A stretch of 64,000 nt of DNA, taken from the IMG/VR virus record IMGVR_UViG_3300027759_004177, positions 1-64,000 of that record, one strand, 5' to 3'. The translations under genes and the position numbers were made by a program. Under the pieces are notes generated by a model, which had not been told where the DNA came from, ran no database searches, and worked only from the letters and a program-made list of their open reading frames with translations. Within the stretch, counting starts at the first letter, position 1; every line of letters begins with the position of its first letter. Positions 30,264-62,410 of this stretch are shown here, one piece after another.

Positions 30264-32523
30264 TAGAGTCTATTATAGGTGCTGTTGGGGTAAATTGTCC
30301 CAATACATTAAATTCAAACTTGTCTTCAATCCAGTCTACTTCAATCACAGTATTGGCTGGAATGTTTTCAAACAAGATCTTTTTACTCAGGGGCACTTTG
30401 ATCAAGTCGCTAATCTTACGTCCCAAGGGTCTAGCACCCATCTTGCTGTCGTAGCCAACTTCAACCAGGTGCTCCACTGCTGTTTCTGTAAGGCGTATTT
30501 TGATACTTTTCTCACTCAACAACTCATTGACTTCGTTGATAAACTTGGCCACAATCTTCTTGATGCTTACTGTGTCTAGTTTATTAAACTTGCAAATACC
30601 ATCCAAACGATTGCGGAACTCGGGCTTAAAGAAGTCTTTGACTGCTCGGTCATCTTCGGTTGATTTAGCAAGCTCACGTCCAAATCCAATGTTGTTCTTT
30701 TCATTGTCTGCGGCACCCAAGTTACTGGTAAGGATAACAATAGCGTTGCGAGCATCTGCTTTCTTACCATTGCTTGAAGTGATAGTGCCTTCGTCCATCA
30801 ACTGCAACAAAATATTAGTCACATCTGGGTGTGCCTTTTCTACTTCGTCAAACAGTATAATACAGTTGGGATTTTTTTCAATGTCGCTGATCAACATGCC
30901 GCCACCTAGGTTTGAGTCGTCGTAGCCCACATAACCCGGGGGAGCACCAATCAACTTGGCCAGTGCATGTTTCTCTTGATACTCACTCATGTCGTAGCGT
31001 AGCAGTTTCATTCCCATACCTTCAGCCAACAGTTTGGCAAGTTCTGTCTTACCTGTACCTGTGGGTCCTAAAAATAAGAAGTTGCCGATAGGCTTATTCA
31101 TTGCTTTGAGTCCAGCACGGGCAACATAGATCTTTTCTAGCACAGTTTCAACCACTTGATCCTGTCCGTACAGTTTGCCTTTAACTGTTTGTTCTAGGTC
31201 CACCAGAGTCTTGGTGCTTTCGCTACCAATTTGTTCTGCTGGAATTTTTGTAAACTTGCTGATAATATCTACGATGTGGTTTTTACGCACAGTCCAGGCC
31301 AGGGCATTGATTTTTAAACGTGCGGCAGCTGTGTCTATTAGATCGATGGCTTTGTCTGGTAGCTTTTTGTCTGGTTGGTAGCGTACACTGAGTTCTACTG
31401 CGGCATCAATGGCTTCGTCGCTGATACTGCCACCGTGGAACTTTTCAAAGTATTCACGCAGGCCACGCAGGATTTCTTTGGCCACAGGGATAGTGGGCTC
31501 TTCAATGGTCATCCTGCAGAAGCGACGCATCAAGGCACGATCTTTTTCAAAGCTCTGTGTGTATTCTTCCCAGGTTGTACTAGCAATAACCTTTAGTTGC
31601 CCTTTGCTTAATGCAGGTTTGATCATGTTGGCAAAGTCCACTGAGCTGTTACTGCCAGAACCGGCGCCACGCATTTGATGTGCTTCGTCAATGAACAGGA
31701 TACATTTGCCCTTGGCCTGCAATGCACCAATCACATCTTTGAACTTTTCTTCAAACTCGCCACGGTACTTGGATCCTGCTAGCAAACTGGCAATGTCAAG
31801 GTTGTAAACAACATAATCTTTAAGGTATTCGGGCACACGTCCATCATTGATGTTACGTGCTAGTCCTTCAGCAATGGCAGTTTTACCTACACCTGCATCA
31901 CCCACCATCAACACATTACTCTTGTTGCGTTTGGCAAGCACCTGTGCAATTTCTTCTAGCTCAAACTCACGTCCTACCACAGGATCAATCTTGCCTTCCT
32001 TGGCAGCCACGTTTAAGTTTTCACAATATTCTTTGAGAATTTCATCTGATCGCACATTGGGACTTACACGACGTCCTTTGGTTTCCACATAGTTTTCGTT
32101 GTAGAAGTCTACTATATGGCCTCGTTCTAACCCATACTTGATAAAGAAGTAACTGGCATGACTGTTTGATTCGGATGCAATGCTTAAGAAGATGTCAATG
32201 ACCTGTACATGGTTACGACCACTGAACAGGACCTGTGTGAATGCACGATTAAACACACGCTCTAAAGCATGTGTTTTTTTAGGATCTTTGGCAGATTCTA
32301 AATCACCACTGGCGATGTATGTTTGTTTGCCGAGATATTCTTCAAGGTCGGCCAACAAAGAATCAACATCGGCACCATAAGCAACCAGTAGATCATTGAA
32401 TGGTTTAAAACTGACCAAACCATGTGCCAAGTGCTCTAATGTTACGTATTCGTGATTGTATCTTTTTGCGGTATCAGTTGCGTTGGCAATAACGATTTCA
32501 ATTTCGGGATTGTGTTGTATCAT
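30229..32523 (-). CDS. clpA: ClpA-type AAA+ unfoldase
   Basis: Clp N domain, Walker A GDAGVGKT and GPTGTGKT, no middle domain, IGF loop (NNIGFG). Confidence 0.9.
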   Translation of the reverse strand: MIQHNPEIEIVIANATDTAKRYNHEYVTLEHLAHGLVSFKPFNDLLVAYGADVDSLLADLEEYLGKQTYIASGDLESAKDPKKTHALERVFNRAFTQVLFSGRNHVQVIDIFLSIASESNSHASYFFIKYGLERGHIVDFYNENYVETKGRRVSPNVRSDEILKEYCENLNVAAKEGKIDPVVGREFELEEIAQVLAKRNKSNVLMVGDAGVGKTAIAEGLARNINDGRVPEYLKDYVVYNLDIASLLAGSKYRGEFEEKFKDVIGALQAKGKCILFIDEAHQMRGAGSGSNSSVDFANMIKPALSKGQLKVIASTTWEEYTQSFEKDRALMRRFCRMTIEEPTIPVAKEILRGLREYFEKFHGGSISDEAIDAAVELSVRYQPDKKLPDKAIDLIDTAAARLKINALAWTVRKNHIVDIISKFTKIPAEQIGSESTKTLVDLEQTVKGKLYGQDQVVETVLEKIYVARAGLKAMNKPIGNFLFLGPTGTGKTELAKLLAEGMGMKLLRYDMSEYQEKHALAKLIGAPPGYVGYDDSNLGGGMLISDIEKNPNCIILFDEVEKAHPDVTNILLQLMDEGTITSSNGKKADARNAIVILTSNLGAADNEKNNIGFGRELAKSTEDDRAVKDFFKPEFRNRLDGICKFNKLDTVSIKKIVAKFINEVNELLSEKSIKIRLTETAVEHLVEVGYDSKMGARPLGRKISDLIKVPLSKKILFENIPANTVIEVDWIEDKFEFNVLGQFTPTAPIIDSNGYIVLDSVQS

Positions 32524-32531
32524 AAAAATAT

Positions 32532-33374
32532 TTATTGAGGGTTGAGTAAATTGCGTACAATTTCTAGTTGTGGTTCAGATAAATCTTGTGGTACAGTTAT
32601 TACAACTTCAGCATAAAGATGTCCACGTGCTTCAGTATTCATTTGATATAAGCCTTGATTGTGTATTCTAAATCTTGTGTTTGGTTGTGTACCAGGCGGC
32701 ACAGTTAACTCAAATTCTCGACCATCTAATCCAGAGACTCGTACCAGGCCACCTGTTATTGCTAACAAACAGTTTACACTAACCGGGGTATATAAGTCAA
32801 TATTATTGACAATAAAATTTTCGGCTGGGTGTACATTAAATTGGACATATAGGTCTCCACGTGGAATGGTGTTAAATAGGTTATCTCCTAGTCCAGTGTA
32901 CTTGATATTGGTACCATTGGTTACACCTCTTGGTATGGTTACTTCTACTGTGCTTCGTTCTCCATTGGATGTGGCAACACTGATGGTCTTTGTCTGCTGT
33001 TCCAACGTGGTAACCAAAGGCACAGGTATTTCTATACGCAGATCTCGATTGCGACGTTGCTGTTGTCTAACTCCGCCAAACGGATCTCCAAAACCAAATT
33101 GTTTGAATATGGCGTCAATATCAGGGTGATTCATACCGGCAGAGGAAAAGTGCCATTGGTTAACACCGTTGCCACCAAATCCATTGCGTTGCATATCATA
33201 CTGTTGACGCCGATTATTATCGCTTAAGGTATCGTAGGCACTTTGTATTTCTTGAAATTTGGTTTTATCGCCACCTTTGTCGGGATGGTGTTGACTTGCA
33301 AGTTTACGATAAGCACGTTTAATCTCTTCCGCAGTGGCTTTTTCGGTAACTCCTAAAATATCGTAATAAGTCAT
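32532..33374 (-). CDS. DnaJ/CbpA-like co-chaperone (no zinc finger)
   Basis: J domain with HPD, G/F region, C-terminal DnaJ domain. Confidence 0.9.
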   Translation of the reverse strand: MTYYDILGVTEKATAEEIKRAYRKLASQHHPDKGGDKTKFQEIQSAYDTLSDNNRRQQYDMQRNGFGGNGVNQWHFSSAGMNHPDIDAIFKQFGFGDPFGGVRQQQRRNRDLRIEIPVPLVTTLEQQTKTISVATSNGERSTVEVTIPRGVTNGTNIKYTGLGDNLFNTIPRGDLYVQFNVHPAENFIVNNIDLYTPVSVNCLLAITGGLVRVSGLDGREFELTVPPGTQPNTRFRIHNQGLYQMNTEARGHLYAEVVITVPQDLSEPQLEIVRNLLNPQ

Positions 33375-33380
33375 TGTAGT

Positions 33381-33421
33381 ATTATAAATGAAAAAGCCGG
33401 CAGAGTCAACTTACCGGCCTT
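33381..33421 (-). terminator. hairpin terminator overlapping the dnaJ promoter
   Basis: GCCGG...CCGGC stem plus T run; TTGACT-17-TATAAT overlapping. Confidence 0.55.
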
Positions 33422-33437
33422 CGAAATAATAAAAAAA

Positions 33438-36945: not shown

Positions 36946-37456
36946 TGATTTTATCCTGTTGATCTACGGTGTCATTGTCAGCACCAGTTTCGTATGCTGC
37001 ATCAATGTCTTCCATGTCAATTGTGCCTGATTCTAGTTCCAAAGCACCTTGTTGTATATCGCTCATGAGCTTTTTAGGCATGACAATTTCAACCAGCCAT
37101 ATGGGGCTCTGTTTCATTTTAGGTACTCGGGTACCGGGTTTAAAATCGTTGGGAGTTTTGACCGTGTCTGGATGCTCAAAGAAATCTTGCTTGTATTGTA
37201 CATCACATTCGTATTCGGCCAAACGTGCAGCACCCTTAGGGTCCGGCATTTTTTTGTATGGCCACATGAATGTGCAAGTTACAAAGTATTTTTGATATGT
37301 GGGGCCTTCTACCAATTCGCCCTGTTTCCAGTTGGCAAACGCATACAGATCCAACTCATCAAGTACTCGTTCAAAGTCAAGCAGAGTGTTAACAGCGGAA
37401 TCTGTTACAAAAATTTCTTTGGTGTTGTCTAGTAGTTCTCTAATATTTGCTGGCAT
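36926..37456 (-). CDS. hypothetical protein
   Basis: Start MPANIRE just downstream of TAAATA. Confidence 0.7.
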   Translation of the reverse strand: MPANIRELLDNTKEIFVTDSAVNTLLDFERVLDELDLYAFANWKQGELVEGPTYQKYFVTCTFMWPYKKMPDPKGAARLAEYECDVQYKQDFFEHPDTVKTPNDFKPGTRVPKMKQSPIWLVEIVMPKKLMSDIQQGALELESGTIDMEDIDAAYETGADNDTVDQQDKINDQPQQ

Positions 37457-37645
37457 AGTACAGTTATTTATCTGAATTTGTACTGATACCGGGTTGAATT
37501 TAATTATGTGGGTATTTATTGTTATGTTGGGTCGTCTAATACTTATGCGTTTTTTAAAGTCAAAAACACACAGTTTAAACTTTTGCCCGTGGACACCTAA
37601 ATATCTTAGTAGACAGCACGACACTACCACTTCAAGGAGGCAACT

Positions 37646-38407: not shown

Positions 38408-38985
38408 GTTACGATACGGTAAACTTCTTCCCAGTTTTTAACTGTACGAACATGGTCGTGATAGTGATGCATATTATGACCATGTTCCATTAACAAACTG
38501 TTGAGACCTAACTTGGCACCTAGTTCGGCATTGGCGATTTTGTCTTCAATCCACCAGCATCCTGTATCTCTGTACGGATATAGTGCCGCATCTTTGTCTG
38601 CCCCAGTATCCAAACACACAATCTTTTGAAATACAGTTTCTCCAAACAATTTACGCAGATTCATTTCACGCAATTTAACAGCATTGGGATCTACACTCAC
38701 ACTGGTGATGCAATGGAATACATATCCGTGTTCTTTGTGTAGTTTTTCCACATAGTACATGGCGTCTCGCAGGGGCGGAAGGAATCCAATACTGGCACTT
38801 TCGTTAAACAACTTGATCAATCTAACTGTCTGTTCTCTACTGATGCCATAACGCTTGCCAATGTCGTAGTCTAAGTTACCGCCGGGTATTTGTTCAAAAC
38901 CATGCTGTTCCATCCAGATTTCAAACGCATATTCCCAGTTAAGGAGTACACCATCGGCATCAACTAATATTACACTTTCTTTCAT
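38392..38985 (-). CDS. HAD-superfamily 5'(3')-nucleotidase-like protein
   Basis: DADGVL, ITS, IEDK. Confidence 0.75.
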   Translation of the reverse strand: MKESVILVDADGVLLNWEYAFEIWMEQHGFEQIPGGNLDYDIGKRYGISREQTVRLIKLFNESASIGFLPPLRDAMYYVEKLHKEHGYVFHCITSVSVDPNAVKLREMNLRKLFGETVFQKIVCLDTGADKDAALYPYRDTGCWWIEDKIANAELGAKLGLNSLLMEHGHNMHHYHDHVRTVKNWEEVYRIVTQTSL

Positions 38986-39647
38986 ACGACCTTTACATAA
39001 TTTAATGTTGTGACACAGGCATCGCCACGATATCCATCTCGTTTGTGCGTTTTAACACGCCCTTGTATTTGTCCTGCCTGCACTATTTTCTTTTGTTCTC
39101 TAGCCCAATAAAATATTAAATTGCCTTCGGCATCATGTCCGTACACAGCATAACAGTCCATACTCTTGATATATCTACTGTCGATCAGGGTAAACTCTGT
39201 GATAATTTTATCGCCCATTTGCCCAATATAACGACTGGCATATTCGAATCGAGCACTGAGTTCACGAACATGATCTTTCTTTTGATAGTCACTGGCCAAT
39301 TTTGGTGCCCAGGCCATTAAACCAAAATCTTTGGCAGTTACAGATGGCTGTGACAGCAGATTGTTTATTTGCCCCAAAAACTTATCGTCACGACTGGACA
39401 GGGTCTGCATGATTCCGGTTTGTTGTAGATATTGCACAATGCCTTCAGCATGCTTTCGATCATGATCTGATACTGTCGGTAAGTTGGCACGGTTGCCTTC
39501 AAGATACTCACGTATCAGTTGACGATTGGGGGCAATAGTACGACCGTCGTCTGTAGTGATTGCATCACGTTCAACACGATCCTGGTTGTGTGCAAATGCG
39601 GCTATGGCTGTGGCCAACGCTTCTAAAGTGGGGAATTTTTGCTTCAT
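38982..39647 (-). CDS. hypothetical protein
   Basis: 221 aa ORF downstream of consensus promoter. Confidence 0.7.
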   Translation of the reverse strand: MKQKFPTLEALATAIAAFAHNQDRVERDAITTDDGRTIAPNRQLIREYLEGNRANLPTVSDHDRKHAEGIVQYLQQTGIMQTLSSRDDKFLGQINNLLSQPSVTAKDFGLMAWAPKLASDYQKKDHVRELSARFEYASRYIGQMGDKIITEFTLIDSRYIKSMDCYAVYGHDAEGNLIFYWAREQKKIVQAGQIQGRVKTHKRDGYRGDACVTTLNYVKVV

Positions 39648-39679
39648 TTGGGTCGCTTATTATCCATTTTCATACTGTA

Positions 39680-39708
39680 ATTATAGCATAAATGGATTTA
39701 TTTGTCAA
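39680..39708 (-). promoter_or_regulatory. consensus sigma70 promoter
   Basis: TTGACA-17-TATAAT. Confidence 0.8.
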
Positions 39709-39734
39709 CTAACAAATTTACTGTAAATAACTGC

Positions 39735-40631
39735 ATGATTCGACTATATTTAAACGGTGGACACGCCATGGGTGATACACTTATGGCCATGTGTTTGTTT
39801 AACAGCCTGAATCAGCCGGTTCATATAACTACAGGCATAGATTCTTGGTACACCACTTGGAAACGTATTTTTAACATTGGCAATCAAATTAACCTTGATC
39901 CTGTTATAAATTCTGTTGTCTGGATCGATCCGCCACATCCGACTCATTTAGAAAGTTTTAAAATATTCAGTAGGTACGATCAATTTGATCATGTGAACGT
40001 GTTTGGGCAATCTTTACCCGTTGGACGCCGTGGAAAAAAATTAGCGGCAGTACTAATCAACGATGGTAACTATGTAAAAGATTTTGAATTTTTTTCCAAT
40101 ATCAAAGACCATAGTGATCCTTATCCATTTATAAAATTTCATACCAAAAAAACATACAACGCAATCTTAGATTTAATACAAGCAGCCGGCTATGATCCTG
40201 TGATCATTGACAGCCGCAATATATCAATTGAACATAAAGTGTTTGTACTCAATGAACTGTGTGATTTTGTTATAGGGTATGAAGGCGGTATATGCCATTT
40301 GGCACACTCATTAAAAATACCTGCTGTTATATTACCCTGGCGTGTTGTCCCAGGAGAAACGCATCAAACTGATTTTTTACACCTTGATCGAAGAACATAT
40401 TTTGTTCGAGATGTGGATGAAATTTTGTCCTGGTCTGTGGGACATTTTAAAACGTTAATTGATGGATTACATTGCGAAACAGGATACAATAATCAGTGGA
40501 TGACAGAATCCACATTTCCCAATCCTACTAAATTTGTTGATTATTTTAAAGCAGGTTCTACCGATAGCTTTAATGTGCAGATAGATTGGGCACTACAGTA
40601 TATAGATAATCCAACTCTAGGCGGATATTAA
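39735..40631 (+). CDS. GT9 (heptosyltransferase)-like glycosyltransferase
   Basis: AMGDTL, FVIGYEGGICHLAHSLKIP. Confidence 0.6.
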   Translation: MIRLYLNGGHAMGDTLMAMCLFNSLNQPVHITTGIDSWYTTWKRIFNIGNQINLDPVINSVVWIDPPHPTHLESFKIFSRYDQFDHVNVFGQSLPVGRRGKKLAAVLINDGNYVKDFEFFSNIKDHSDPYPFIKFHTKKTYNAILDLIQAAGYDPVIIDSRNISIEHKVFVLNELCDFVIGYEGGICHLAHSLKIPAVILPWRVVPGETHQTDFLHLDRRTYFVRDVDEILSWSVGHFKTLIDGLHCETGYNNQWMTESTFPNPTKFVDYFKAGSTDSFNVQIDWALQYIDNPTLGGY

Positions 40632-40870
40632 CCTTTTTTAAATCTAGCTACGTATTGGTGTAGGCTATTGAGATAAGCAGTTTGGTTGGTCAATTTGGAT
40701 TCTAAACGGTCTAATCGACCTTTTAACTCATGATTCTGTTGCTGTAATTGTTCCACTGTGACAGTGGCTTCTTTGAGACGTTTTTCGTGGTTAAGCAAAT
40801 TGGGACGTGGCGGAGCATTGGGATCCACAGCCCGTTTCTTTTTGACCTTGTACATATCAAGTAAGCTCAT
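40628..40870 (-). CDS. coiled-coil hypothetical protein
   Basis: 80 aa ORF. Confidence 0.65.
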   Translation of the reverse strand: MSLLDMYKVKKKRAVDPNAPPRPNLLNHEKRLKEATVTVEQLQQQNHELKGRLDRLESKLTNQTAYLNSLHQYVARFKKG

Positions 40871-41190
40871 ATGTAATATTTATCTGCGGGTAAGGAAGGT
40901 AATTTTATCGCTACAACTTCAGTATCTTCAAGATAGTGTGCGTGGTAATGTTCGCCTGGTTCACTGACATAGATATCCCCAGGTCCAAATTCTTCTCCGT
41001 TGATTATCATGCGACCTTTTGTGATCAATTGTAATTCTGTGATTACTTTGTGATAGTGCGGGATATCTACTGCACCGGCCGGATTGCCTTGCCAACATAC
41101 TTCAAATTCTTTTGTGCGTATTACGGCCTTGGGGAAATCTCCTACAAACCAGCCACGGTCACCGCTGTCACTGAGCCGGTACTTCTTCAT
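40867..41190 (-). CDS. cupin domain protein
   Basis: HYH...E...G...PGEHYH. Confidence 0.75.
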   Translation of the reverse strand: MKKYRLSDSGDRGWFVGDFPKAVIRTKEFEVCWQGNPAGAVDIPHYHKVITELQLITKGRMIINGEEFGPGDIYVSEPGEHYHAHYLEDTEVVAIKLPSLPADKYYI

Positions 41191-46601: not shown

Positions 46602-49600
46602 TTAAGTAAACACTCCATATTGTGGGAATTTAACATATTTATCCTCACTTCCGGGCTCGTAGTACTGATCTCTGAAAGTGAAGAATTTGGTAGTATCGTT
46701 GTTAAATGTTGTTCGGATTCTCAGTGCTGGGTTGCTTATAAACACTTTGTAAAATGGTACTGTTTGTCCTGGTGCCAAATCCAGGCTATAGGTCAATATG
46801 GCGCTTGATAAGGTTTTACCAAACAGTATTCGTACACGTTCGTACACAGTGATTTCTTGCACAAATGTCAAATTGACTATGCCATTGGTAATATCGATTC
46901 TCCATATTCCGCCACGACGATTAACAGTTGATGTGCCCTGGCTTTTTTCTAAAAATCCAGGTACAACTGTGTAGGTATCATATGATCCTGAGTCGTAACC
47001 TTCTACTACTGTGGTTTCAGTGTTGTCACCGATGTACGAAGCTGAATAATCTACCCATCCGTCGTAGGGCCCAGCATCTTCAAATTGTTCTTGTTTAGAA
47101 AATATTATAGTTTCGCCGTCGGCAAAATTGTCAATGCCGTCAATGCCGCCAATGGCTCGAACATATTCAACTGGTCGACCATTGATTTGGCTGTATGGCA
47201 CACTAACTGCATAAGTCACCGAAGCCACAATGGTACCAACGTTGACATTTTGATCGCTGTCAAAAGTGGTTTCTCTGTCTTTAATATATGCTCCTGTGCT
47301 GATATCGTAATTAGAACTATAATAATTATCAACCTGATAACGATCTACGGTAAACTCAATTTGATTGAAATCAAAATTTGATTTACGAATCTTGTAAGCA
47401 ATTTTTTCTCCCTCGCCGGGCTCGGCGTGGGCAATCACAACAGCTTTGGTATAGCCTAATGGAATAGTAAATCCTGTGGCAGTGGTAGCATCGGGTTGAT
47501 TACTGGTCATCCAGGGTGGCAAACTACTTTGATCCTGGTAACCAATGATTTGTTCCATTCTACGTGTCATATTATCCGAGCTGTTGGGATAGATAATGTT
47601 ATATGCGATTCCGTCTTGGCTGATGTAGGGGTTATCAATCACTGTGCTTAAATCTGTGGATTGAGCAGGACCAATGCCTTGATCATTTTCGCCCGGATCT
47701 ATTACCTCTACATAAACAACTTCATATTTAATTCCGTATGTGGCGTCTAGCACGTAAGCTACCTTTACATCACCAAACGTGTATGTTTTGGTAAAATGAT
47801 TTTCCGCCATGGCAGTTTGATATTCGGTCAACTCGCTAGGACTCAACCCCGGCAAAAACAACATTGTTAAATCTTTTTGTACACCAAAATTTGGATCATT
47901 GAGTCTATAGATTGAACTTTCATTGAATATATTAGAATCAGAAATCAATGCGTTATACATTTGTCTTTTGCTCACCGGGGGCATGGCTTTTAAATAAAGA
48001 TTTTCGTATGGTTCAGTGTCTATAAGATTTAATTTTAATGTAAATGTTCTAGTACTTGATGCACTTCCATCAACTGTTTCGGCTCGGACTCTAAATGTAA
48101 CGGTTCTGTCAATGACCAATAATTCATTATCAAATGTGGTAGTATAGTCATCGACGCTGAAAGATTCAAACGTGGCTCGTCCAGCAATTTCTCCAGTTGG
48201 CAACAACGTTAGTCCTTGTGGCAATCTGCAAGATACTCCTCGTTCATCAACTAAACTATATGTAATTTTGGCACCAATAGCACTTACAGCCTCAACACGT
48301 AATTCGCTGATAGTACCATTGTCAATGGTGCCCAGGTCCAGCGGACTTGTCCAAGTAATAATACTGTTGGGATCTCCAACCACCGGCAAAGTAAAATATG
48401 TAGGCCTACTACAGTATTCTACCTGATAAAAACTAGAATTTGTTACTGTTGCACTTAGCGACGATGAGTTACTGACCCAGAGACTGTTGTCCAATAAGGT
48501 CACATTTCCTGAGACCGGGGTCACATAAATTGTTGAGGATGTGACATTGGCCAACACAGACAAATTAGCTGCTGCAACGCTGTTGGCAAATCTTTGTGTG
48601 ACGAACTGAGTGGTGTTTACTGTAATGTTAGCATTGATTGATAATCTAATGTTACTGGTGGTTCCATATCCTACAGTTTTACATACTTCGATACCAAAAT
48701 CAAATTCTTCATAGGCCGATGTTTGAGGATTAATTTTTCCAAAAATCCACCCCGAGTCGCTGTCTAATAACACCCCGGGCAAGTTTGATACTGTGGTACT
48801 GACAAAGTCAAAACTACCTGGTAAACCGTTGTTGAGATCGTCTCGATTGAGTGGATCAAACGGACTACCATCATAGGTACCTGCGGTGTTGACAATTCGA
48901 TATGTTAAATTTTCAGTGCCTACATCAAAATCGTAGCCGTCAATTTTAGCAGCATAATATGCATCTTGTCTGCCCGCAGGCAGTATGGTGGAAGTATTGC
49001 GTATCACAGGAATATACACATTTCCCGAGTCAACTGTTAGATACACATCATCTATACTTAAACTACTATCAGCAGTATAGTTAGGCCGACTGACCACATT
49101 GATCACATAGGTTTGCAAGTCATAGTTTGCGCCATCGAATGCTTGTACAGTAAAAGTATATGCTACGTTTTGACTCAGTTGGTTAAATTGATATGGGCCG
49201 GTATCGTATTCTTGTTGCGACACAGAAATACCATTAACAGTTTCTTCACCATCGTACCCACTTGGACCGTATTGTCCAACTAACTCCACAGGCTCTAGAT
49301 ATCCAGTGATTGCTCCGGTGCTGTTTAAGGTCAGACCAGGTGGTAGTCGACCACTGGTCACAGCCCAGTTGATTTCAACTGCAGGATTCAATTGTATTAC
49401 TTCTAGCTGTTGATCGAAGAAGTCACCATCAAAATAACTACCAAGGAACGTGGTTTCTGGCTCAATGATCGGACCATAAATGTTGGTCACATTTAAACTA
49501 AAAGCACGATCGGTAATGCGATTTAAACTGTTGGTAGCACGAACAGTAAATCTATAACTTCGTGATTCATTGACTTTGATAGGATCAAGTATAGTCGGTA

Positions 49601-50312
49601 CACCTTGTAACAGTCCTGGACTGTAAAAATCTATAGTATCTCCTGTTGTGACAGCACTGGTAGTGGCAACGGTCAATGTAACGATATTGGTCGCGGTGTT
49701 GATGTCAGCCACACGAGTGTTGGCAGCAATTTTTGACCCAAACACATAGTCATTGACACTTATTGTTTGAGTGTTTGATACTTTTACAGTGGTGCTGGTA
49801 GAAAATTGTGTAGCTGTTATGGTCTTGGTCACACGGTGACTAATAAGTTGCATGCCCGGGGGCAACTCTCCTGACACTAAACTGTAGATAATACCTAAAC
49901 CAGCAGAACTTTGGGCTTGTATAGTCAGAGAATAAAAATTACCATTGGGTACTGTTCCAAGAATGCCCTCGGGTGTTGTCCATTGAAAATCTTGATTGAC
50001 AGTATTGGTAATGATTATGATAAATTTACCGTCTAATACTTGGCCGTCGCTGCTGATCACTCTAACTATGAACTCATAGTCTAAAGAAATAAAATAATTG
50101 TTTGATGAAGTAACATACTGCGGAGTTCCAGAAATAATTCCTGTGGTGCTTAAAGTTAGTCCAGGTGGCAAATCTCCGCTGATTTTAGAATAAGTTAATG
50201 TGGCTCCAGTGTTGCTGGTATCGGCTACCACTAACTTGGTAGTAGATGGACTGCCGATTGGAAAATTAGCAATGGATCCTGGTGGTGTTACCCAAGTTAA
50301 ACTATCTGCCAT
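46602..50312 (-). CDS. large structural protein with Ig-like repeats (baseplate wedge-like)
   Basis: Repeated W.TP.G.L and G.LPPGL.L..G.I.G units. Confidence 0.7.
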   Translation of the reverse strand: MADSLTWVTPPGSIANFPIGSPSTTKLVVADTSNTGATLTYSKISGDLPPGLTLSTTGIISGTPQYVTSSNNYFISLDYEFIVRVISSDGQVLDGKFIIIITNTVNQDFQWTTPEGILGTVPNGNFYSLTIQAQSSAGLGIIYSLVSGELPPGMQLISHRVTKTITATQFSTSTTVKVSNTQTISVNDYVFGSKIAANTRVADINTATNIVTLTVATTSAVTTGDTIDFYSPGLLQGVPTILDPIKVNESRSYRFTVRATNSLNRITDRAFSLNVTNIYGPIIEPETTFLGSYFDGDFFDQQLEVIQLNPAVEINWAVTSGRLPPGLTLNSTGAITGYLEPVELVGQYGPSGYDGEETVNGISVSQQEYDTGPYQFNQLSQNVAYTFTVQAFDGANYDLQTYVINVVSRPNYTADSSLSIDDVYLTVDSGNVYIPVIRNTSTILPAGRQDAYYAAKIDGYDFDVGTENLTYRIVNTAGTYDGSPFDPLNRDDLNNGLPGSFDFVSTTVSNLPGVLLDSDSGWIFGKINPQTSAYEEFDFGIEVCKTVGYGTTSNIRLSINANITVNTTQFVTQRFANSVAAANLSVLANVTSSTIYVTPVSGNVTLLDNSLWVSNSSSLSATVTNSSFYQVEYCSRPTYFTLPVVGDPNSIITWTSPLDLGTIDNGTISELRVEAVSAIGAKITYSLVDERGVSCRLPQGLTLLPTGEIAGRATFESFSVDDYTTTFDNELLVIDRTVTFRVRAETVDGSASSTRTFTLKLNLIDTEPYENLYLKAMPPVSKRQMYNALISDSNIFNESSIYRLNDPNFGVQKDLTMLFLPGLSPSELTEYQTAMAENHFTKTYTFGDVKVAYVLDATYGIKYEVVYVEVIDPGENDQGIGPAQSTDLSTVIDNPYISQDGIAYNIIYPNSSDNMTRRMEQIIGYQDQSSLPPWMTSNQPDATTATGFTIPLGYTKAVVIAHAEPGEGEKIAYKIRKSNFDFNQIEFTVDRYQVDNYYSSNYDISTGAYIKDRETTFDSDQNVNVGTIVASVTYAVSVPYSQINGRPVEYVRAIGGIDGIDNFADGETIIFSKQEQFEDAGPYDGWVDYSASYIGDNTETTVVEGYDSGSYDTYTVVPGFLEKSQGTSTVNRRGGIWRIDITNGIVNLTFVQEITVYERVRILFGKTLSSAILTYSLDLAPGQTVPFYKVFISNPALRIRTTFNNDTTKFFTFRDQYYEPGSEDKYVKFPQYGVFT

Positions 50313-53569: not shown

Positions 53570-53896
53570 TTATGTTGGGCTAAAACTGCTTCCGCAACCG
53601 CAAGTAGTAACTGCGTTGGGGTTTTTGATGGCAAACGTACTGCCGTATTGATCTTCTCGGTAGTCTATTTCTGCACCTTGCAAATATCCACCGCTCATGC
53701 TGTCTACTAGAACCTGTACACCGCTGATGTCTAACTCCCAATCATCTTCTGCTTGAGTATCATCTAGGGTGAAACCGTAGCTCATGCCGCTACAGCCACC
53801 GCCTTGTACAAAAACTCTGAGTTTTAAACTGGGGTTATTTTCCTCGGCCAAAATTTCTTGTAATTTTGCCACTGCTGATTCAGTTATTGTGATCAT
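53570..53896 (-). CDS. erpA: A-type Fe-S carrier (ErpA/IscA)
   Basis: [20 protein letters not shown]. Confidence 0.88.
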
Positions 53897-54435
53897 AATC
53901 TGCGATTGATGGCGTCCCAATCCATGATACGCCATAAGTTGTCTAGGTATTTTTCTTTGTTGGTTCCATAATCTATGGTCCATGCATGTTCCCACCAATC
54001 CACTAGCAGAGCTATGTCTGTGCGTTTTTGATGATTATGTATAGTTTTAATGGTTCCTGATTTGCTAAGATAAATCCAATTGGATCCTTGCAGTTTCATG
54101 GCTTCTTCTTTGAAACGTTTTTTAAAATCCACAAAATTTTTATGATTGCGTTCGATAATACTCAGTATCACGCCATGTGGTTTGCGAGTACCGGGGCGAG
54201 CAAATTGACTGAACCAGATACTGTGCAAGTAAGCACCGGCTTCGTTAAATGTACGATCTCCCTCTTTCTTATTGAAACGGTCAACATAGCCTTTGTACAA
54301 TTTACCGTAATGATTGTCTATGGTGGCCGCACTGGTCACAGGTGCCAGGGCAGTACGAGCATAGGGCAGTTTGATCTGCTCTAGGTCAACTTGGCTTTTT
54401 GCTTCTAGGAGGTCTAAGGTTTCGCGGAGGTCCAT
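53893..54435 (-). CDS. Fe/Mn superoxide dismutase
   Basis: LPY..L.P, H(YGK), H(SIW), DWWEHA metal ligands. Confidence 0.85.
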
Positions 54436-54439
54436 GCTA

Positions 54440-54664
54440 CTATTTAGCACGATACACCACACGTCCTCGCGTTAAGTCGTATGGGCTCATTTCTACGTCT
54501 ACACGATCGCCTAATAGTACTCGGATATTGTTTTGTCTAAGCCTGCCGCCGATTGTGGCAGTGATTTTTGATTGTTGCTCGTTGTCTAATATGATTCTAA
54601 ACATGGCATTGGGCAATACTTCGTCCACTACTCCGGACATTTTAATGATATCTTCTTTACTCAC
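54440..54664 (-). CDS. infA: translation initiation factor IF-1
   Basis: KED.I...[31 protein letters not shown]. Confidence 0.93.
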
Positions 54665-54698
54665 GTTGGGCCGATTCTCCTTTATATGCTAGTATTAT

Positions 54699-55088
54699 TT
54701 ACCTACGCATCTTGGAGATGTCCACAGCTTCTTCGTCACTGAAAATAGGTACTGCGTTGCTCTTGTGCATGGTGCCAATGCCTTTGACCTTGGTACCGGT
54801 GTACTCTTGATTGGCGGGAGTGGTGCAAGCCACCCAACCGGTGTCGCGGCTGGCGATATAGGGTGTTTCACGTCCCGGAGGTATTGTTACTTTGAGAGTG
54901 AGTGAATCTGTAGACAAAGTACGTCGCTTACGTTTGGTTTCTTGTTCTATGCCCAATTCCTTGAGCTTGGCTTTCCACATGGTGTCTAGCTGTTCGGCCT
55001 TGCGTTTGGCTTCGGCACTGGCCCATTTTTTGGGTCCACGTTTTTTACCGGTAGTAGTTAGCCACGGTCCTTCGAGGTGCATTGTCAT
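54699..55088 (-). CDS. basic hypothetical protein
   Basis: 129 aa ORF ending GIGTMHKSNAVPIF...MRR. Confidence 0.7.
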   Translation of the reverse strand: MTMHLEGPWLTTTGKKRGPKKWASAEAKRKAEQLDTMWKAKLKELGIEQETKRKRRTLSTDSLTLKVTIPPGRETPYIASRDTGWVACTTPANQEYTGTKVKGIGTMHKSNAVPIFSDEEAVDISKMRR

Positions 55089-55094
55089 AGTAGT

Positions 55095-55123
55095 ATTATA
55101 CTATTTTAGGATTTATCGGACAA
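55095..55123 (-). promoter_or_regulatory. sigma70-like promoter
   Basis: TTGTCC-17-TATAAT. Confidence 0.6.
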
Positions 55124-56431: not shown

Positions 56432-56460
56432 ATTATACATTAAAAGGATTTATTGGTCAA
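56432..56460 (-). promoter_or_regulatory. sigma70-like promoter
   Basis: TTGACC-17-TATAAT. Confidence 0.7.
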
Positions 56461-56901: not shown

Positions 56902-57143
56902 TTAAACTTTAAACTAAACAAGGTAGCATCTCGTGCTTCTGTAAAGTAAAAGGCAGCAACTTCGTCAAACATAGCACTGACATCTGAAGTTTCCACCAAC
57001 TCTGTCCAAAGCAAACTTAGGTTCTGTTCTTTGCACCAACGTTTCATTTTCCACATCACAAATGCAGGATCTCCAATTAACACTCGATGACATTGATCAA
57101 GTACCGCTTGCGGCGGAGTAAGGTCGGCCTTGTTTATATACAT
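56898..57143 (-). CDS. small paralog-family protein
   Basis: WC...FYFTEARDATLFSLKF. Confidence 0.65.
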   Translation of the reverse strand: MYINKADLTPPQAVLDQCHRVLIGDPAFVMWKMKRWCKEQNLSLLWTELVETSDVSAMFDEVAAFYFTEARDATLFSLKFK

Positions 57144-58720
57144 TATCGGTTGATGTGTTTGATCAATTCCCAGTGTGTTGGTACTAGGTCTAGCACACCA
57201 CGGGCCATTTCATCACGGTGTTTATAGAACAACCGAGCACGTGGTAACAGGGCTTCCGTGATTGGACGTGTTGGACAATCCGCAAATGCCCTCATGGTGG
57301 TGATAGTCTGTGCCCAGTCGTACTTGTTATAACGTGTATGGTCGAAGTCTTTCTCACGTCTGTAGATATCGCTAAAATGACGACCAAACCAGCCGTGTAC
57401 CATATCAACAGCTTCCTCACGTTTGGCGGCTTGCTCACGCCAAAACTCTGTGTCTGAGCGTTCTGTCAAGGCATAGTGTGCCCACAGGAAGTCTCCAGTA
57501 ATTTTAACTTCTCTGCTCATTAAACGACTTAGTACACGATCCTCGCCGTCGTTCCAATGGCCATCGTGCTTCTTAAGTACTGCCACTACTAGTTCATTGA
57601 TAAGTGTAGTAAAGCTAATGCTAGTAGCTTCCAAAGGTTCTAGGAAGTTTGAGCTCAATCCACAGGCGATCACGTTGCGATGAGCACTACGATCCAAGAT
57701 ACCATTATCAAACTTTAATGTAACTTTGTGATCCCAAGTCATTCCTAGATTCTGCCAGTAAGCACCTAGCTCTTCTACAGCTTGTTCTGTGGTAGTGTAA
57801 CGTGTATCATAAACGTAACCCGAACCCATGTCGTCACGCAAGGGAACTCGCCACGACCAGCCATGCTTGAATGCTGTGGCGTGTAGGTTGGGTACGCAGA
57901 ATTCTTCTTGTTTGCCTTGATAGTTTACACGTCCGCCAACGGCGTTTTTACAAGGTAGTCGATCTTCGTAACTGACCCATTTGGCCACGGGTCCAATTAG
58001 TAAACGCTTAAAACCTGTGCAGTCAATGTACAAGTCTGCGGTGTGAGTTTCTCCGCTATCGTCAACAATGCCAGTGACTTCTTCACGTTCGTTACGATCA
58101 ACTCGTACAATATGACGCTCTAAGGTACGAACACCGTTGGGAACGGCCACTTTGTCTCGAATAGTCTGTCCAACTTTGAATGCGTTGATGTTGTAAGCAT
58201 AGCCCGGCACACGACTTGAATACTGATGTCCCGCTAGATCTCTATGAGCACGACGATTTTGTACTAAATGATATGTGTCTGACGCATACTGATAGTAATC
58301 CGCTTCTGTAATGATGCCACGTTTAAGCATTTCAATCCAGTAGTCAGCTATGAGTACAGAGTCATCCTTGGCACAACTAACACGCTTGCCAAATTCATCT
58401 ATACTGTGGTTAATACCCTTTTCTGTAACAAAGTCGCCAAACCCGTGCCAGCGAGTGTCTGAACCTGTGCGCCACCCATCAAAGGTGACTCCGTATTTGA
58501 ATGTACTGCCCGATTCACGCATCCACACATCTTCTGATAATCCCATTTTTTCTAAATGATTACGGAACTGTGGTACTGTGGTTTCGCCTACACCAATGAT
58601 GGGAACTTCTTTACTGTGTATTACAGTAACTTCTATTCCAGGCAGTTGACTACTTAAAAAGCCAGCACTAAGCCAGCCCGCGGTTCCGCCGCCTACGACT
58701 ATGATTTTTTTAACTTGCAT
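57143..58720 (-). CDS. flavin-dependent tryptophan halogenase-like protein
   Basis: GGGTAGW, IGVGE, TFK, DCTGF, GWSWRVP, FLEPLEATSI. Confidence 0.88.
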   Translation of the reverse strand: MQVKKIIVVGGGTAGWLSAGFLSSQLPGIEVTVIHSKEVPIIGVGETTVPQFRNHLEKMGLSEDVWMRESGSTFKYGVTFDGWRTGSDTRWHGFGDFVTEKGINHSIDEFGKRVSCAKDDSVLIADYWIEMLKRGIITEADYYQYASDTYHLVQNRRAHRDLAGHQYSSRVPGYAYNINAFKVGQTIRDKVAVPNGVRTLERHIVRVDRNEREEVTGIVDDSGETHTADLYIDCTGFKRLLIGPVAKWVSYEDRLPCKNAVGGRVNYQGKQEEFCVPNLHATAFKHGWSWRVPLRDDMGSGYVYDTRYTTTEQAVEELGAYWQNLGMTWDHKVTLKFDNGILDRSAHRNVIACGLSSNFLEPLEATSISFTTLINELVVAVLKKHDGHWNDGEDRVLSRLMSREVKITGDFLWAHYALTERSDTEFWREQAAKREEAVDMVHGWFGRHFSDIYRREKDFDHTRYNKYDWAQTITTMRAFADCPTRPITEALLPRARLFYKHRDEMARGVLDLVPTHWELIKHINR

Positions 58721-60058: not shown

Positions 60059-60225
60059 CTTAACCTAAAATGAGTTGCCTGCTCGTCGGTTTCAAATGTA
60101 AACGTGTATCTATAACTGGGAAATTGGCTGGCCCAATTCCAACAATCCATTCCAAAATGTGAATCGCACCAGTCGATGATGTTGAACACGTTTTTGTCTT
60201 TACAATCTAAGGTTACAGTAGTCAT
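60049..60225 (-). CDS. small paralog-family protein (58 aa)
   Basis: Manual translation MTTVTLDCKD...DWCDSHFG...FTFETDEQATHFRLRWQ. Confidence 0.65.
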   Translation of the reverse strand: MTTVTLDCKDKNVFNIIDWCDSHFGMDCWNWASQFPSYRYTFTFETDEQATHFRLRWQ

Positions 60226-60230
60226 ACCTT

Positions 60231-60259
60231 ATTATACATTAAAAAGATTTACTGGTCAG
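60231..60259 (-). promoter_or_regulatory. sigma70-like promoter
   Basis: CTGACC-17-TATAAT; spacer nearly identical to 56432..56460. Confidence 0.6.
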
Positions 60260-60674
60260 TTTTTTTGAGTGTTTCCCACATCTTCTTTTGTTCCAAAAAC
60301 TTTTGTTCGAGTTTGTGATAGTGTTTGGCTGCTGCCTTGAGTTCTGCAAACTCTTGTTCAAGTTCGATATTTCGGTTGATGCGTGTGGGAATCATCAGTT
60401 CGTTCTTGACGGCCAGCATGGTTTCCTTGAGACTTAGGCCATCGATCACCAGGTCCTGTTCGGTAATCTCAACTTTGGGTCGTTTTGTATAATATGAATC
60501 TACTACCCAGGTAGGGTTAGTGGTAGCAGCAGTGGTGTAGGTAATTCCGGCACTACCACCTGTAATAGTTATATTAGAGTAATTGCTACCCGAATAAGCG
60601 GTTGAATAGGTGGGACTTAAAGTATACCCGCCGGTTGATATTTTTACTGAATTTTGTTTTTTTGTTTTTGCCAT
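60249..60674 (-). CDS. hypothetical protein
   Basis: S/T-rich N-terminus, coiled-coil C-terminus. Confidence 0.65.
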   Translation of the reverse strand: MAKTKKQNSVKISTGGYTLSPTYSTAYSGSNYSNITITGGSAGITYTTAATTNPTWVVDSYYTKRPKVEITEQDLVIDGLSLKETMLAVKNELMIPTRINRNIELEQEFAELKAAAKHYHKLEQKFLEQKKMWETLKKTDQ

Positions 60675-60675
60675 A

Positions 60676-60721
60676 AAAAAGCCCTATACCGTAGTATAAG
60701 GCCTTTTAGTTACAATGTCAA
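60676..60721 (-). terminator. porin terminator overlapping a sigma70-like promoter
   Basis: Hairpin GCC..TATAC/GTATA..GGC with T tail; TTGACA-17-TATACT. Confidence 0.5.
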
Positions 60722-60725
60722 ACTA

Positions 60726-61877: not shown

Positions 61878-62015
61878 GTTTTTCCTTTTTGATTTTAAAT
61901 ATGAAGTTTTGTGAAACTTGCTAGTGTTATTTACTAGAAGTGAGTTGACCTGCAAAAATAATTATCCCAATCATGCTTGGGTATTATATGCTACTATTAT
62001 GATATTGTTGGCTAT

Positions 62016-62390
62016 TTAGTTTGGGAGATCAAAATAGCGACGAGTTGTCAACAACCATCCAATTTGGTTAAAGTCCGACTCTACTTCTTCTGTCACATAG
62101 CTTTCTTCAACAAAGCCGGTAAAGTCTGTGCCTTGAAATCCGGTGCCTGAGCAGTACCAATCTATGTAACTGTCGTCTTCTCGGATGTCAGCTACAATGC
62201 TGGCCGCATAACGCCAGGTGCAGTCCCAATGTATATTTTTAAGTATACCCCAGACATCTTCAGGAACATATTCATTGTTGCAAAGTGCGGCATATAAATT
62301 TTGGGCATAGATTTCTTGCTGTCGTACTTTGGATATGATCCAATCTGTACTACGGATATCACGCTCAAGATTAAAAACTCTGCGACCCAT
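62016..62390 (-). CDS. hypothetical protein
   Basis: 124 aa; YAQNLYAALCNN, YIDWYCSG. Confidence 0.7.
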   Translation of the reverse strand: MGRRVFNLERDIRSTDWIISKVRQQEIYAQNLYAALCNNEYVPEDVWGILKNIHWDCTWRYAASIVADIREDDSYIDWYCSGTGFQGTDFTGFVEESYVTEEVESDFNQIGWLLTTRRYFDLPN

Positions 62391-62410
62391 AAAGTATTTA
62401 ATTGGCTCAT

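What the first reader, a model, noticed from the sequence alone, without database searches (positions are those of the whole stretch)
32521..62400. Many genes appear to be leaderless, in a phage that encodes IF-1
The ATG lies 4-8 nt after a promoter element with no room for an RBS. After TAAATA: clpA (5 nt), 37456 (8), GT9-like 39735 (5), 40870 (6), SOD (5), 62390 (4). After TATAAT of full sigma70-like promoters: dnaJ (6), 55088 (6), 60225 (5). Transcripts would start at or next to the AUG. With phage IF-1 this hints at biasing initiation toward phage mRNA (inference).
Basis: partly seen in the sequence, partly recalled or inferred. Interest (0 to 1): 0.6.

Follow-up and report, generated by a model that had tools for sequence, protein, structure and literature searches.

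The report
Promoter-adjacent start codons in huge phage
In this 357-kb phage and its uncultured relatives, about one gene in twelve has its ATG placed exactly where a promoter should start transcription, so these genes are probably expressed as leaderless mRNAs, but the idea that the phage's own IF-1 drives this is not supported by which genomes carry which feature.

Summary
All nine listed sites are as described. Genome-wide, TAAATA five bases before a long-ORF ATG is the commonest of all hexamer-by-distance combinations, ahead of the Shine-Dalgarno (SD) hexamers. TATAAT at six bases ranks fifth.

TAAATA matches the T4-type late promoter, and the genome encodes a gp55-like late sigma. The T4 box spans -13 to -6, so five spacer bases put the A of ATG at +1. 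TTGAC-N17-TATAAT-N6-ATG does the same for sigma-70-type promoters.

Distances are bimodal: 4-8 nt with no SD, or 17 nt and more with an SD. About 32 of 394 called ORFs fit the short class. All 32 use ATG and none has an SD-led alternative start. They include the genes for ClpA, DnaJ, SOD, a DnaB-like helicase, a primase-like protein and large terminase.

The pattern recurs in two diverged whole relatives and in orthologues across 80 related contigs. It is absent from T4, RaK2 and Phosso, and at most sporadic in PA5oct.

IF-1 does not track it: one relative without IF-1 has the pattern, and Phosso has IF-1 without it.

No RNA data could be obtained, so the transcription starts are inferred. The closest precedent is Thermus phage phiYS40.

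The parts
32521..32534 (-). Late-type box TAAATA (32529-32534), 5-nt T-rich spacer, then the ATG of clpA (gene 30229-32523). TAA of the box is the dnaJ stop codon.
   Evidence: Most of 80 relatives keep TAAATA-ttttt-ATG, even where the dnaJ stop lies further upstream. Some relatives have the same box followed by a 25-30 nt leader with an SD.
33372..33419 (-). Early sigma-70-type promoter of dnaJ: -35 TTGACT (33404-33409), 17 nt, -10 TATAAT (33381-33386), 6 nt, ATG 33374. The -35 sits in the loop of a hairpin followed by a T-run (33391-33419).
   Evidence: TTGAC-N17-TATAAT-N5-8-ATG is kept in most relatives while the spacer sequence varies. The hairpin is present in 29 of 47 distinct relatives, with 23 different stems.
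37454..37470 (-). Late-type box TAAATA (37465-37470), 8 nt, ATG 37456 of a virion structural protein (phrog_12928).
   Evidence: Orthologues always carry TAAATA upstream. The leader is either 5-8 nt without an SD or 18-22 nt with a GGA-type SD.
39724..39737 (+). Late-type box TAAATA (39724-39729), 5 nt, ATG 39735 of a 298-aa protein of unknown family. Its upstream neighbour is divergent, so no read-through transcript can supply it.
   Evidence: The one orthologue found (L003) keeps TAAATA-5-ATG. Pfam and PHROGs gave no hit.
39644..39708 (-). Consensus early promoter (TTGACA 39703-39708, TATAAT 39680-39685), 6 nt, then a 9-codon mini-ORF (39644-39673, MKMDNKRPK). The mini-ORF's TGA overlaps, as ATGA, the ATG of the SD-less 221-aa gene 38982-39647.
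   Evidence: Relative L008 has the same layout with a 9-codon mini-ORF of a different peptide sequence.
40868..40882 (-). Late-type box TAAATA (40877-40882), 6 nt, ATG 40870 of an 80-aa gene. The ATG overlaps the stop of upstream ORF 40867-41190 (ATGA).
   Evidence: The box is kept 4-9 nt before the ATG in relatives, whether it lies in codons (D-K-Y-Y) or over the stop TAA.
54433..54446 (-). Late-type box TAAATA (54441-54446), 5 nt, ATG 54435 of Fe/Mn SOD (53893-54435). The box overlaps the end of IF-1.
   Evidence: G002 keeps TAAATA-4-ATG. No other in-frame start lies before the conserved SOD N-terminus.
54440..54701 (-). IF-1 gene (54440-54664, GTG start). It has its own late-type box (54696-54701) and a 31-nt leader carrying AAGGAG, so it is not leaderless.
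55086..55123 (-). Early promoter TTGTCC (55118-55123), 17 nt, TATAAT (55095-55100), 6 nt, ATG 55088 of a 129-aa protein (phrog_27048). First gene of the g55088/IF-1/SOD module.
60223..60259 (-). Early promoter CTGACC (60254-60259), 17 nt, TATAAT (60231-60236), 5 nt, ATG 60225 of a 58-aa ORF. The spacer matches the phage's conserved early-promoter consensus.
62388..62440 (-). Intrinsic terminator hairpin (62411-62440), then late-type box TAAATA (62395-62400), 4 nt, ATG 62390 of a 124-aa ORF.
   Evidence: The G002 orthologue keeps terminator, TAAATA, ttttt, ATG.

Best explanation
The motifs are the phage's two promoter classes, placed so that transcription starts at, or within about 3 nt of, the A of the start codon. 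One class is recognised by host RNA polymerase with sigma-70 (TTGAC-N17-TATAAT, early genes). The other is recognised by polymerase carrying the phage's gp55-like late sigma (box g/c-A-TAAATA, late genes). The resulting mRNAs have no room for a Shine-Dalgarno sequence. They would have to be translated as leaderless mRNAs, most likely by 70S ribosomes binding a 5'-terminal AUG.

About 32 of 394 called ORFs in this genome are of this kind, roughly a third of the late promoters and a fifth of the strong early ones. The same promoters in front of other genes, or of the same gene in relatives, carry a 17-32 nt leader with an SD. Leader lengths between the two classes are avoided.

Shown here: motif identity, spacing, absence of an SD, exclusive use of ATG, conservation, and restriction to this clade. 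Inferred: the actual 5' ends and the mode of translation.

The phage IF-1 is a normal SD-led gene. Nothing in the genomes ties it to this feature.
For: 1. Unbiased count: TAAATA at 5 nt is the top hexamer-by-distance combination before long-ORF ATGs, and TATAAT at 6 nt is fifth.
2. Promoter identity: the genome encodes a gp55-family late sigma (phrog_12791 E 2e-80, phrog_234 E 2e-23). The T4 late box spans -13 to -6 (PMC2988020), so 5 spacer bases put ATG at +1. Early sites have full -35/-10 elements with 17-bp spacing.
3. Bimodality: distances are 4-8 nt without an SD, or 17 nt and more with AGGA/GGAG. In the leadered late class, A (70%) sits at the 5th base after the box, next to the position the ATG takes in the leaderless class. 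Both classes share the g/c-A context upstream of the box.
4. Start codons: 32 of 32 are ATG with no SD-led alternative in the first 40 codons. The two TTG calls do have such an alternative. SD-led genes use GTG or TTG in 48 of 211 cases (p 0.02). Pfam domains begin at residues 2-4 in several of these proteins.
5. Context: seven sites directly follow intrinsic terminators, four have divergent upstream neighbours, and 12 of 13 early sites lie in spacers of 17 nt or more. No upstream transcript can serve these.
6. Conservation: dnaJ, clpA, g37456, g40870 and g62390 keep the motif-to-ATG spacing across relatives, while the spacer sequence, the upstream stop position and the coding context all change.
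7. Orthologue state: 16 of 32 leaderless genes are still leaderless in G002 or G004, against 2 of 149 SD genes (p 2e-12).
8. Replication and controls: the histogram recurs in whole genomes G002 and G004. It is absent from T4, RaK2 and Phosso and at most sporadic in PA5oct, although their late-promoter peak at 20-32 nt is detected by the same method.
Against: - There is no transcript evidence.
- Ten of 17 late-type sites with a same-strand upstream gene lie within 12 nt of that gene's stop. Translational coupling on read-through transcripts could serve those genes.
- The T4-type clamp (gp45) was not found with the T4 protein or with PF09116. The late system is therefore only partly documented.
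- The host is unknown. A beta-proteobacterial tmRNA is the only clue. Whether its ribosomes translate leaderless mRNAs well is also unknown.
- My gene calls are home-made, and 149 ORFs had no recognised signal.
Confidence: 0.7

Rival explanations
1. Translational coupling is the working mechanism. The genes are read from polycistronic transcripts made further upstream, and ribosomes finishing the upstream gene re-initiate at the nearby SD-less ATG. The TAAATA boxes are internal late promoters or AT-rich gene ends, and their closeness to the ATG is secondary.
For: - Ten of 17 late-type sites with a same-strand neighbour lie within 12 nt of the upstream stop. clpA, SOD and 40870 are among them.
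- The phage clearly uses coupling elsewhere: the 148 ORFs with no signal have a median gap of -1 nt to the upstream gene.
- The mini-ORF at 39644-39673 suggests ATGA coupling is exploited.
Against: - It cannot explain sites after terminators, sites with divergent neighbours, or 12 of 13 early sites in spacers of 17 nt or more.
- It does not explain why the box keeps a 5 +/- 2 nt distance to the ATG while the upstream stop changes both type (TAA, TAG, TGA) and position.
- It does not explain the sharp peak at one distance or its absence from T4, RaK2 and Phosso, which also have tightly packed genes.
Confidence: 0.15
2. The phage IF-1 is the key to the system. Extra IF-1, perhaps with the phage's initiator-like tRNA-Met, shifts initiation toward the phage's leaderless mRNAs.
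For: - IF-1 is full length and canonical.
- It sits in an early module headed by a leaderless gene.
- A review reports that IF1, IF2 and above all fMet-tRNA stimulate leaderless translation in vitro, and that IF3 inhibits it.
- The genome carries a tRNA-Met with the C1:A72 mismatch and the CGCGGGG acceptor stem, and no IF-3.
Against: - G004 lacks IF-1 and the whole module, yet has the leaderless signal.
- Phosso has IF-1 and no signal.
- PA5oct has an initiator-like tRNA and no clear signal.
- The sample is small, and G004 is only 97% complete.
Confidence: 0.15
3. UAAAUA-N5-AUG acts at the RNA level rather than as a promoter. It could be an AU-rich ribosome or S1 loading site, or an endonuclease processing site that trims transcripts to the AUG.
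For: The spacer is AT-rich and is sometimes conserved, for example ttttt before clpA. AU-rich elements can replace an SD in some systems (my own knowledge).
Against: - The same box with the same upstream context stands 17-26 nt before other genes, with an SD in between, as a promoter would.
- It matches the T4 late box, and a gp55 homologue is present.
- The parallel TATAAT class has bona fide -35 elements.
Confidence: 0.05
4. The finding is chance, or an artefact of wrongly chosen start codons.
For: One look-alike, TATAAT 8 nt before 30263, is indeed chance. Gene calls are not curated.
Against: Top rank among 53,248 hexamer-by-distance combinations. Replication in two other genomes. Orthologue conservation. 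Domain alignments start at residues 2-4. No alternative SD-led starts.
Confidence: 0.02

Closest known systems
Thermus phage phiYS40 (Sevostyanova et al. 2007, as summarised in PMC3594737)
   Same: A large virulent myovirus whose host-polymerase promoters sit next to the start codon, so many mRNAs are leaderless. A link to initiation factors was proposed.
   Different: - In phiYS40 most middle and late mRNAs are leaderless, and its host phylum uses leaderless genes routinely (PMC12340547).
- Here the share is about 8% of genes, and SD-led genes are the majority.
- The likely host is a beta-proteobacterium.
- One of the two promoter classes here is gp55-type.
- phiYS40 changes the levels of host IF2 and IF3; this phage encodes IF-1.
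T4 late promoters (TATAAATA, gp55/gp33/gp45)
   Same: The box is nearly identical, there is no -35 element, the downstream segment is AT-rich, and a gp55-family sigma is encoded next to a gp47-like gene.
   Different: - T4's boxes stand about 26-29 nt before the ATG and none is adjacent.
- The first T of the box is not conserved here.
- gp45 was not detected.
Classic leaderless mRNAs of Proteobacteria and their phages (lambda cI from PRM, and others)
   Same: A 5'-terminal AUG, no SD, an AUG requirement, and a sigma-70 -10 hexamer about 6-7 nt upstream (and my own knowledge).
   Different: Those are single regulatory genes. Here dozens of genes are involved, including replication genes (DnaB-like helicase, primase-like protein), packaging (TerL), chaperones and virion proteins, driven from two promoter classes.
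Jumbo phages with mapped transcription starts (phiKZ, AR9) and the relative PA5oct
   Same: Large genomes. PA5oct is a relative: its late sigma is 43% identical, and it has TTGAC/TATAATA promoters.
   Different: The phiKZ dRNA-seq study found no leaderless transcript. AR9 5' UTRs are 26-491 nt long. PA5oct shows no clear peak of adjacent ATGs.

Membership tests
Leaderless mRNA genes | Primary 5' end at, or within a few nt of, the start codon | not testable with these tools
Only promoter geometry supports it.
Leaderless mRNA genes | No Shine-Dalgarno sequence and no room for one between promoter and start | tested here: met
   The spacer is 4-8 nt, and 32 of 34 genes have no SD-led alternative start in the first 40 codons.
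Leaderless mRNA genes | AUG as start codon | tested here: met
   All 32 are ATG. The two TTG calls have SD-led alternatives and were dropped.
Leaderless mRNA genes | -10 element about 5-8 nt upstream of the ATG, as in leaderless-rich bacteria | tested here: met
   The mode is 6 nt for TATAAT and 5 nt for TAAATA. The same layout is described for Deinococcus-Thermus.
T4-type late promoter system | TATAAATA-like box without a -35 element | tested here: met
   The box is g/c-A-TAAATA, with no conservation further upstream and an AT-rich downstream segment. The first T of the T4 box is not conserved here.
T4-type late promoter system | gp55-family late sigma encoded by the phage | tested here: met
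   G000 279093-280007 (-): phrog_12791 E 2e-80, phrog_234 E 2e-23, T4 gp55 E 1e-5.
T4-type late promoter system | Sliding clamp gp45 (and the co-activator gp33) | tested here: inconclusive
   The T4 gp45 protein and PF09116 found nothing. A divergent clamp is not excluded. gp33 was not searched.
Sigma-70-type promoter | TTGACA-like -35, 17 +/- 1 bp spacer, TATAAT-like -10 | tested here: met
   64 sites with at most 1 mismatch genome-wide, sharing a conserved spacer consensus. The window's sites are among the scan tool's best.
Bacterial IF-1 (infA) | Full-length S1-like IF-1 domain above the Pfam cut-off | tested here: met
   PF01176 scores 72.5-73.4 bits against a cut-off of 30.2. End-to-end match to solved IF-1 chains, E 1e-22.
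   G004: layout without IF-1. Phosso: IF-1 without layout. The sample is small.
phiYS40-like strategy | Most middle and late transcripts are leaderless | tested here: not met
   About 19-21 adjacent against about 36 leadered late boxes. SD-led genes dominate.

The most novel reading that the evidence does not exclude
This clade of huge phages runs two translation-initiation channels. A conserved subset of early and late genes (chaperones, helicase and primase, terminase, virion proteins) is expressed as leaderless mRNAs from both sigma-70-type and gp55-type promoters. Phage-supplied initiation components (IF-1 where present, and an initiator-like tRNA-Met) raise the cell's capacity for 5'-terminal-AUG initiation. 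These genes would then stay translated when SD-dependent initiation is saturated or shut down. Leaderless mini-ORFs joined by ATGA overlap would feed ribosomes to SD-less genes downstream.
Probability: 0.15. Interest if true: 0.75.

Novelty: new variant of a known kind. Interest (0 to 1): 0.5.

Why it matters
Leaderless genes are thought to be rare in Proteobacteria and in their virulent phages. The jumbo phages with mapped transcription starts show none. Here a widespread uncultured clade, at least 351 related contigs, appears to use them systematically, including from T4-type late promoters, where the T4 control here shows none and I know of no report.

Three consequences follow if this is confirmed:
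- Gene callers that expect a ribosome-binding site could place these starts wrongly.
- The many orthologue pairs that differ only in having a leaderless or an SD-led 5' end form a natural series for studying what makes a leaderless mRNA work.
- Promoter prediction alone would give transcription starts to single-base accuracy in such genomes.

The negative result on IF-1 is useful too. It cautions against reading phage-encoded translation factors as evidence for a particular initiation mode.

Tried and rejected
- Near-identical DNA in the phage collection: none.
- T4 gp45 protein and PF09116 against the genome: nothing, so the clamp part of the late system is undocumented. IF-3 (PF00707): none.
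- 'GT9-like' label for 39735: no Pfam or PHROGs support. Not pursued.
- TATAAT 8 nt before ATG 30263: rejected as chance, because in relatives the region is conserved as clpA coding sequence and the hexamer is not kept.
- TTG starts at 133279 and 167355: dropped from the leaderless set, since each has an SD-led start a few codons downstream.
- Idea that TAAATA is only the upstream stop codon plus AT-rich sequence: rejected, because the stop varies in type and position while the box-to-ATG distance holds.
- Literature searches: nothing links leaderless genes to huge phages, cyanophages or gp55 late promoters. The phiYS40 primary paper is not held, so it is cited through a review.
- Column-wise covariation count on the dnaJ hairpin: abandoned because the alignment is not in structural register. 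Each sequence was folded on its own instead.
- Big protein searches, structure prediction and complex prediction: not used, because nothing in the claim rests on them.


Full report
**Setting.** The window is the first 64 kb of a single 356,865-bp viral record (GC 42.7%, CheckV 100% complete) from IMG/VR. Most genes lie on the minus strand. No near-identical DNA exists in the phage collection. A gp55-family late sigma factor is encoded next to a gp47/SbcD-like gene. Its nearest cultured relatives are Sinorhizobium phage Phosso, Pseudomonas phage PA5oct and the RaK2-like phages, at 39-43% identity. The phage therefore belongs to the broad T4-related jumbo group. A ClpA search found 351 related viral contigs at 61-100% identity, several of 340-375 kb.

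**The observation.** Pfam confirms ClpA, DnaJ, Fe/Mn SOD and IF-1. The 'GT9-like' label for 39735 could not be confirmed.

To avoid circular reasoning I started from motifs, not from gene calls.
- For every ATG that opens at least 50 codons (3030 on both strands), I counted each hexamer at each distance from 0 to 40 nt.
- Among 4096 hexamers at 13 distances, TAAATA at 5 nt is the most frequent (14, mean elsewhere 2.1, Poisson p 5e-8).
- It stands ahead of the Shine-Dalgarno (SD) hexamers: AAAGGA at 7 nt gives 12, and AAGGAG at 5 and 6 nt gives 11 each.
- TATAAT at 6 nt is fifth (10 against 1.7, p 1e-5).

**What the motifs are.** TAAATA has a second, broad peak 17-26 nt before ATGs. Those sites have an AGGA- or GGAG-type SD in between. 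Both classes share the same upstream context (g/c, then A, then TAAATA) and show no conservation further upstream.
- This is the T4-type late promoter. In T4 the 8-bp box occupies -13 to -6 and is followed by an AT-rich segment, with no -35 element (PMC2988020).
- Five spacer bases therefore place the A of ATG at +1.
- In the leadered class an A (70%) sits at the 5th base after the box. This is adjacent to the position the ATG takes in the short class.

The TATAAT sites are full sigma-70-type promoters with a strikingly conserved consensus, gGTTGACCaataaatccttttaatgTATAAT. Among 64 such sites, the distance to the gene is either 5-7 nt or at least 17 nt with AAGGAG. Six spacer bases again put the A at +1. 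The avoided interval, roughly 9-16 nt, is what one expects if a leader must be either absent or long enough to hold an SD plus its spacing.

**How many genes, and which.** A crude classification of 394 ORFs gave four groups:

| Class | ORFs |
|---|---|
| SD-led | 211 |
| Late-promoter-adjacent | 21 |
| Early-promoter-adjacent | 13 |
| No recognised signal | 149 |

Ninety-eight of the 137 no-signal ORFs with a same-strand upstream neighbour overlap or abut it, so they are presumably translationally coupled.

Of the 34 adjacent starts, the two TTG ones have an SD-led start a few codons downstream and were dropped. The other 32 all use ATG and have no plausible SD-led alternative. SD-led genes use GTG or TTG in 48 of 211 cases (p 0.02).

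The set includes ClpA, DnaJ, SOD, a virion protein, a DnaB-like helicase, a Toprim primase-like protein, the large terminase, an exoribonuclease, a CHASE2-cyclase, a fatty-acid desaturase, a radical-SAM protein and a GT17 glycosyltransferase. In several of them the Pfam domain starts at residues 2-4, which supports the chosen start.

Seven sites follow an intrinsic terminator directly: 33374, 62390, 150391, 166149, 168261, 227652 and 264015. Four late sites have divergent upstream neighbours. Twelve of 13 early sites lie in spacers of 17 nt or more. For these genes no upstream transcript is available.

**Comparative evidence.**
- *dnaJ.* In 80 related loci, dnaJ keeps TTGAC-N17-TATAAT-like-N6 (range 5-8)-ATG while the spacer sequence changes freely.
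- *clpA.* It keeps TAAATA-ttttt-ATG in most relatives, including those where the dnaJ stop has moved 10-25 nt upstream. The box is therefore not just a stop codon. In other relatives the same box is followed by a 25-30 nt leader with an SD.
- *Virion-protein gene 37456.* It always has the box, and its leader is either 5-8 nt or 18-22 nt with a GGA-type SD.
- *Gene 40870.* It keeps the box 4-9 nt upstream, whether the box lies in the codons D-K-Y-Y or over a TAA stop.
- *Gene 62390.* Its orthologue in G002 keeps terminator, box, five T, ATG.
- *Negative control.* The TATAAT 8 nt before 30263 is not conserved.

I fetched two whole relatives, G002 (354,959 bp, ClpA 68% identical) and G004 (338,510 bp, 69%).
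- Both reproduce the bimodal histogram. G002 has 5 and 11 sites at 4 and 5 nt. G004 has 9 and 10, plus TATAAT at 6 nt with 11.
- Orthologues of leaderless genes are leaderless in 16 of 32 comparisons. Orthologues of SD genes are leaderless in 2 of 149 (p 2e-12).

The same method applied to T4, RaK2, Phosso and PA5oct finds their late-promoter peak at 20-32 nt but no peak at 4-6 nt. At most one or two plausible sporadic cases occur in each. The layout is thus a property of this clade, not of T4-related jumbo phages in general.

**IF-1.** The gene (54440-54664) is a full-length canonical IF-1. It starts with GTG behind AAGGAG and its own late box, so it is not leaderless itself.
- IF-1 is present in four of five large relatives. 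It is absent from G004 (97% complete), which lacks the whole g55088/IF-1/SOD module yet has the leaderless signal.
- Phosso has IF-1 but no signal. PA5oct, RaK2 and T4 have no IF-1 and no clear signal.
- With this small sample the two features do not travel together.

A review states that IF1 and IF2 stimulate leaderless translation in vitro, that excess fMet-tRNA stimulates it strongly, and that IF3 inhibits it (PMC9031893). The genome also carries an initiator-like tRNA-Met with C1:A72 and no IF-3. PA5oct carries such a tRNA too. A helper role for these factors is possible but not indicated.

**Rivals.**
- *Translational coupling.* This is a real alternative for the ten late-type genes that start within 12 nt of the upstream stop. 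It fails for the terminator-preceded, divergent and early sites. It also does not explain the fixed box-to-ATG distance.
- *An RNA-level role for UAAAUA.* This is unlikely, given that the box matches the promoter class and a late sigma is present.
- *Chance.* This is excluded by the counts, the replication and the conservation above.

**What is missing.** The clamp of the late system was not found. The host is unknown. The only clue is a full-length permuted tmRNA of the beta-proteobacterial family (RF01850, 144.5 bits).

**Known and new.** Leaderless mRNAs are well known, as is the '-10 next to the ORF' layout: lambda cI, Actinobacteria, Deinococcus-Thermus (PMC12340547). A phage precedent exists. 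Thermus phage phiYS40 makes most middle and late mRNAs leaderless and shifts host IF2 and IF3 levels. In contrast, the phiKZ dRNA-seq study found no leaderless transcript and AR9 5' UTRs are 26-491 nt long. Searches linking leaderless genes to huge phages, cyanophages or gp55 late promoters found nothing.

I rate this a new variant of a known kind, for three reasons:
- The use is systematic and evolutionarily conserved.
- Both sigma-70-type and gp55-type promoters are involved.
- The host is probably proteobacterial and the clade is uncultured but widespread.

I put the leaderless reading at 0.7. I rate the IF-1 link as not supported.

Noticed in passing
window 33391-33419 (-), and the matching place in L002-L081: The -35 hexamer of the dnaJ promoter lies in the loop of a strong hairpin (-11 to -19 kcal/mol) followed by a T-run. 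The T-run is at the same time the promoter spacer. 29 of 47 distinct relatives have the hairpin, with 23 different stem sequences. It looks like a compact terminator-promoter unit, or a structure that controls access to the -35.
   Followed up: partly
window 39644-39708 (-): A consensus early promoter is followed at 6 nt by a 9-codon mini-ORF. Its TGA overlaps (ATGA) the ATG of an SD-less 221-aa gene. Relative L008 has a mini-ORF of the same length but a different peptide. This suggests a leaderless upstream ORF that delivers ribosomes by coupling.
   Followed up: partly
G000 72012-72400 (-) (L213:513-901): A full-length permuted (two-piece) tmRNA of the beta-proteobacterial family RF01850 (144.5 bits), with tag ANDEQFALAA. 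It is a clue that the host is a beta-proteobacterium.
   Followed up: partly
G000 195541-195615 (-): A tRNA-Met with a C1:A72 mismatch and a CGCGGGG acceptor stem, so it is initiator-like. It has only two of the three G-C pairs in the anticodon stem and a short D stem. G002 and PA5oct have similar tRNAs, and G004 has an A1:A72 variant.
   Followed up: partly
Genome-wide, e.g. window 56432-56460, 60231-60259; G000 168268, 235231: Early promoters share a conserved spacer (TTGACC-aataaatccttttaatg-TATAAT), not only the two hexamers. This hints at an extra factor or a DNA-shape requirement.
   Followed up: no
window 53893-55088 (-), compared with G004: The three-gene module g55088 (phrog_27048), IF-1 and SOD is syntenic in G002 but absent as a whole from G004.
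   Followed up: partly
G000 104514-106565 (-); window 57143-58720 (-); window 46602-50312 (-): Unusual cargo: a CHASE2-sensor adenylate/guanylate cyclase (leaderless type), a tryptophan-halogenase-like protein, and a 1236-aa protein with an S8 protease domain similar to those of Atu_ph07 and Phosso.
   Followed up: no
window 62410-62441: The terminator before g62390 has an A-run on one side and a T-run on the other. It could terminate in both directions.
   Followed up: no
G002 and G004 (aragorn output): The relatives carry 30-40 tRNA genes against 11 here, including a predicted CUA-anticodon (amber suppressor-like) tRNA in G002, G004 and Phosso. The 'tmRNA' calls in G002 and G004 have implausible tags and may be false.
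   Followed up: no
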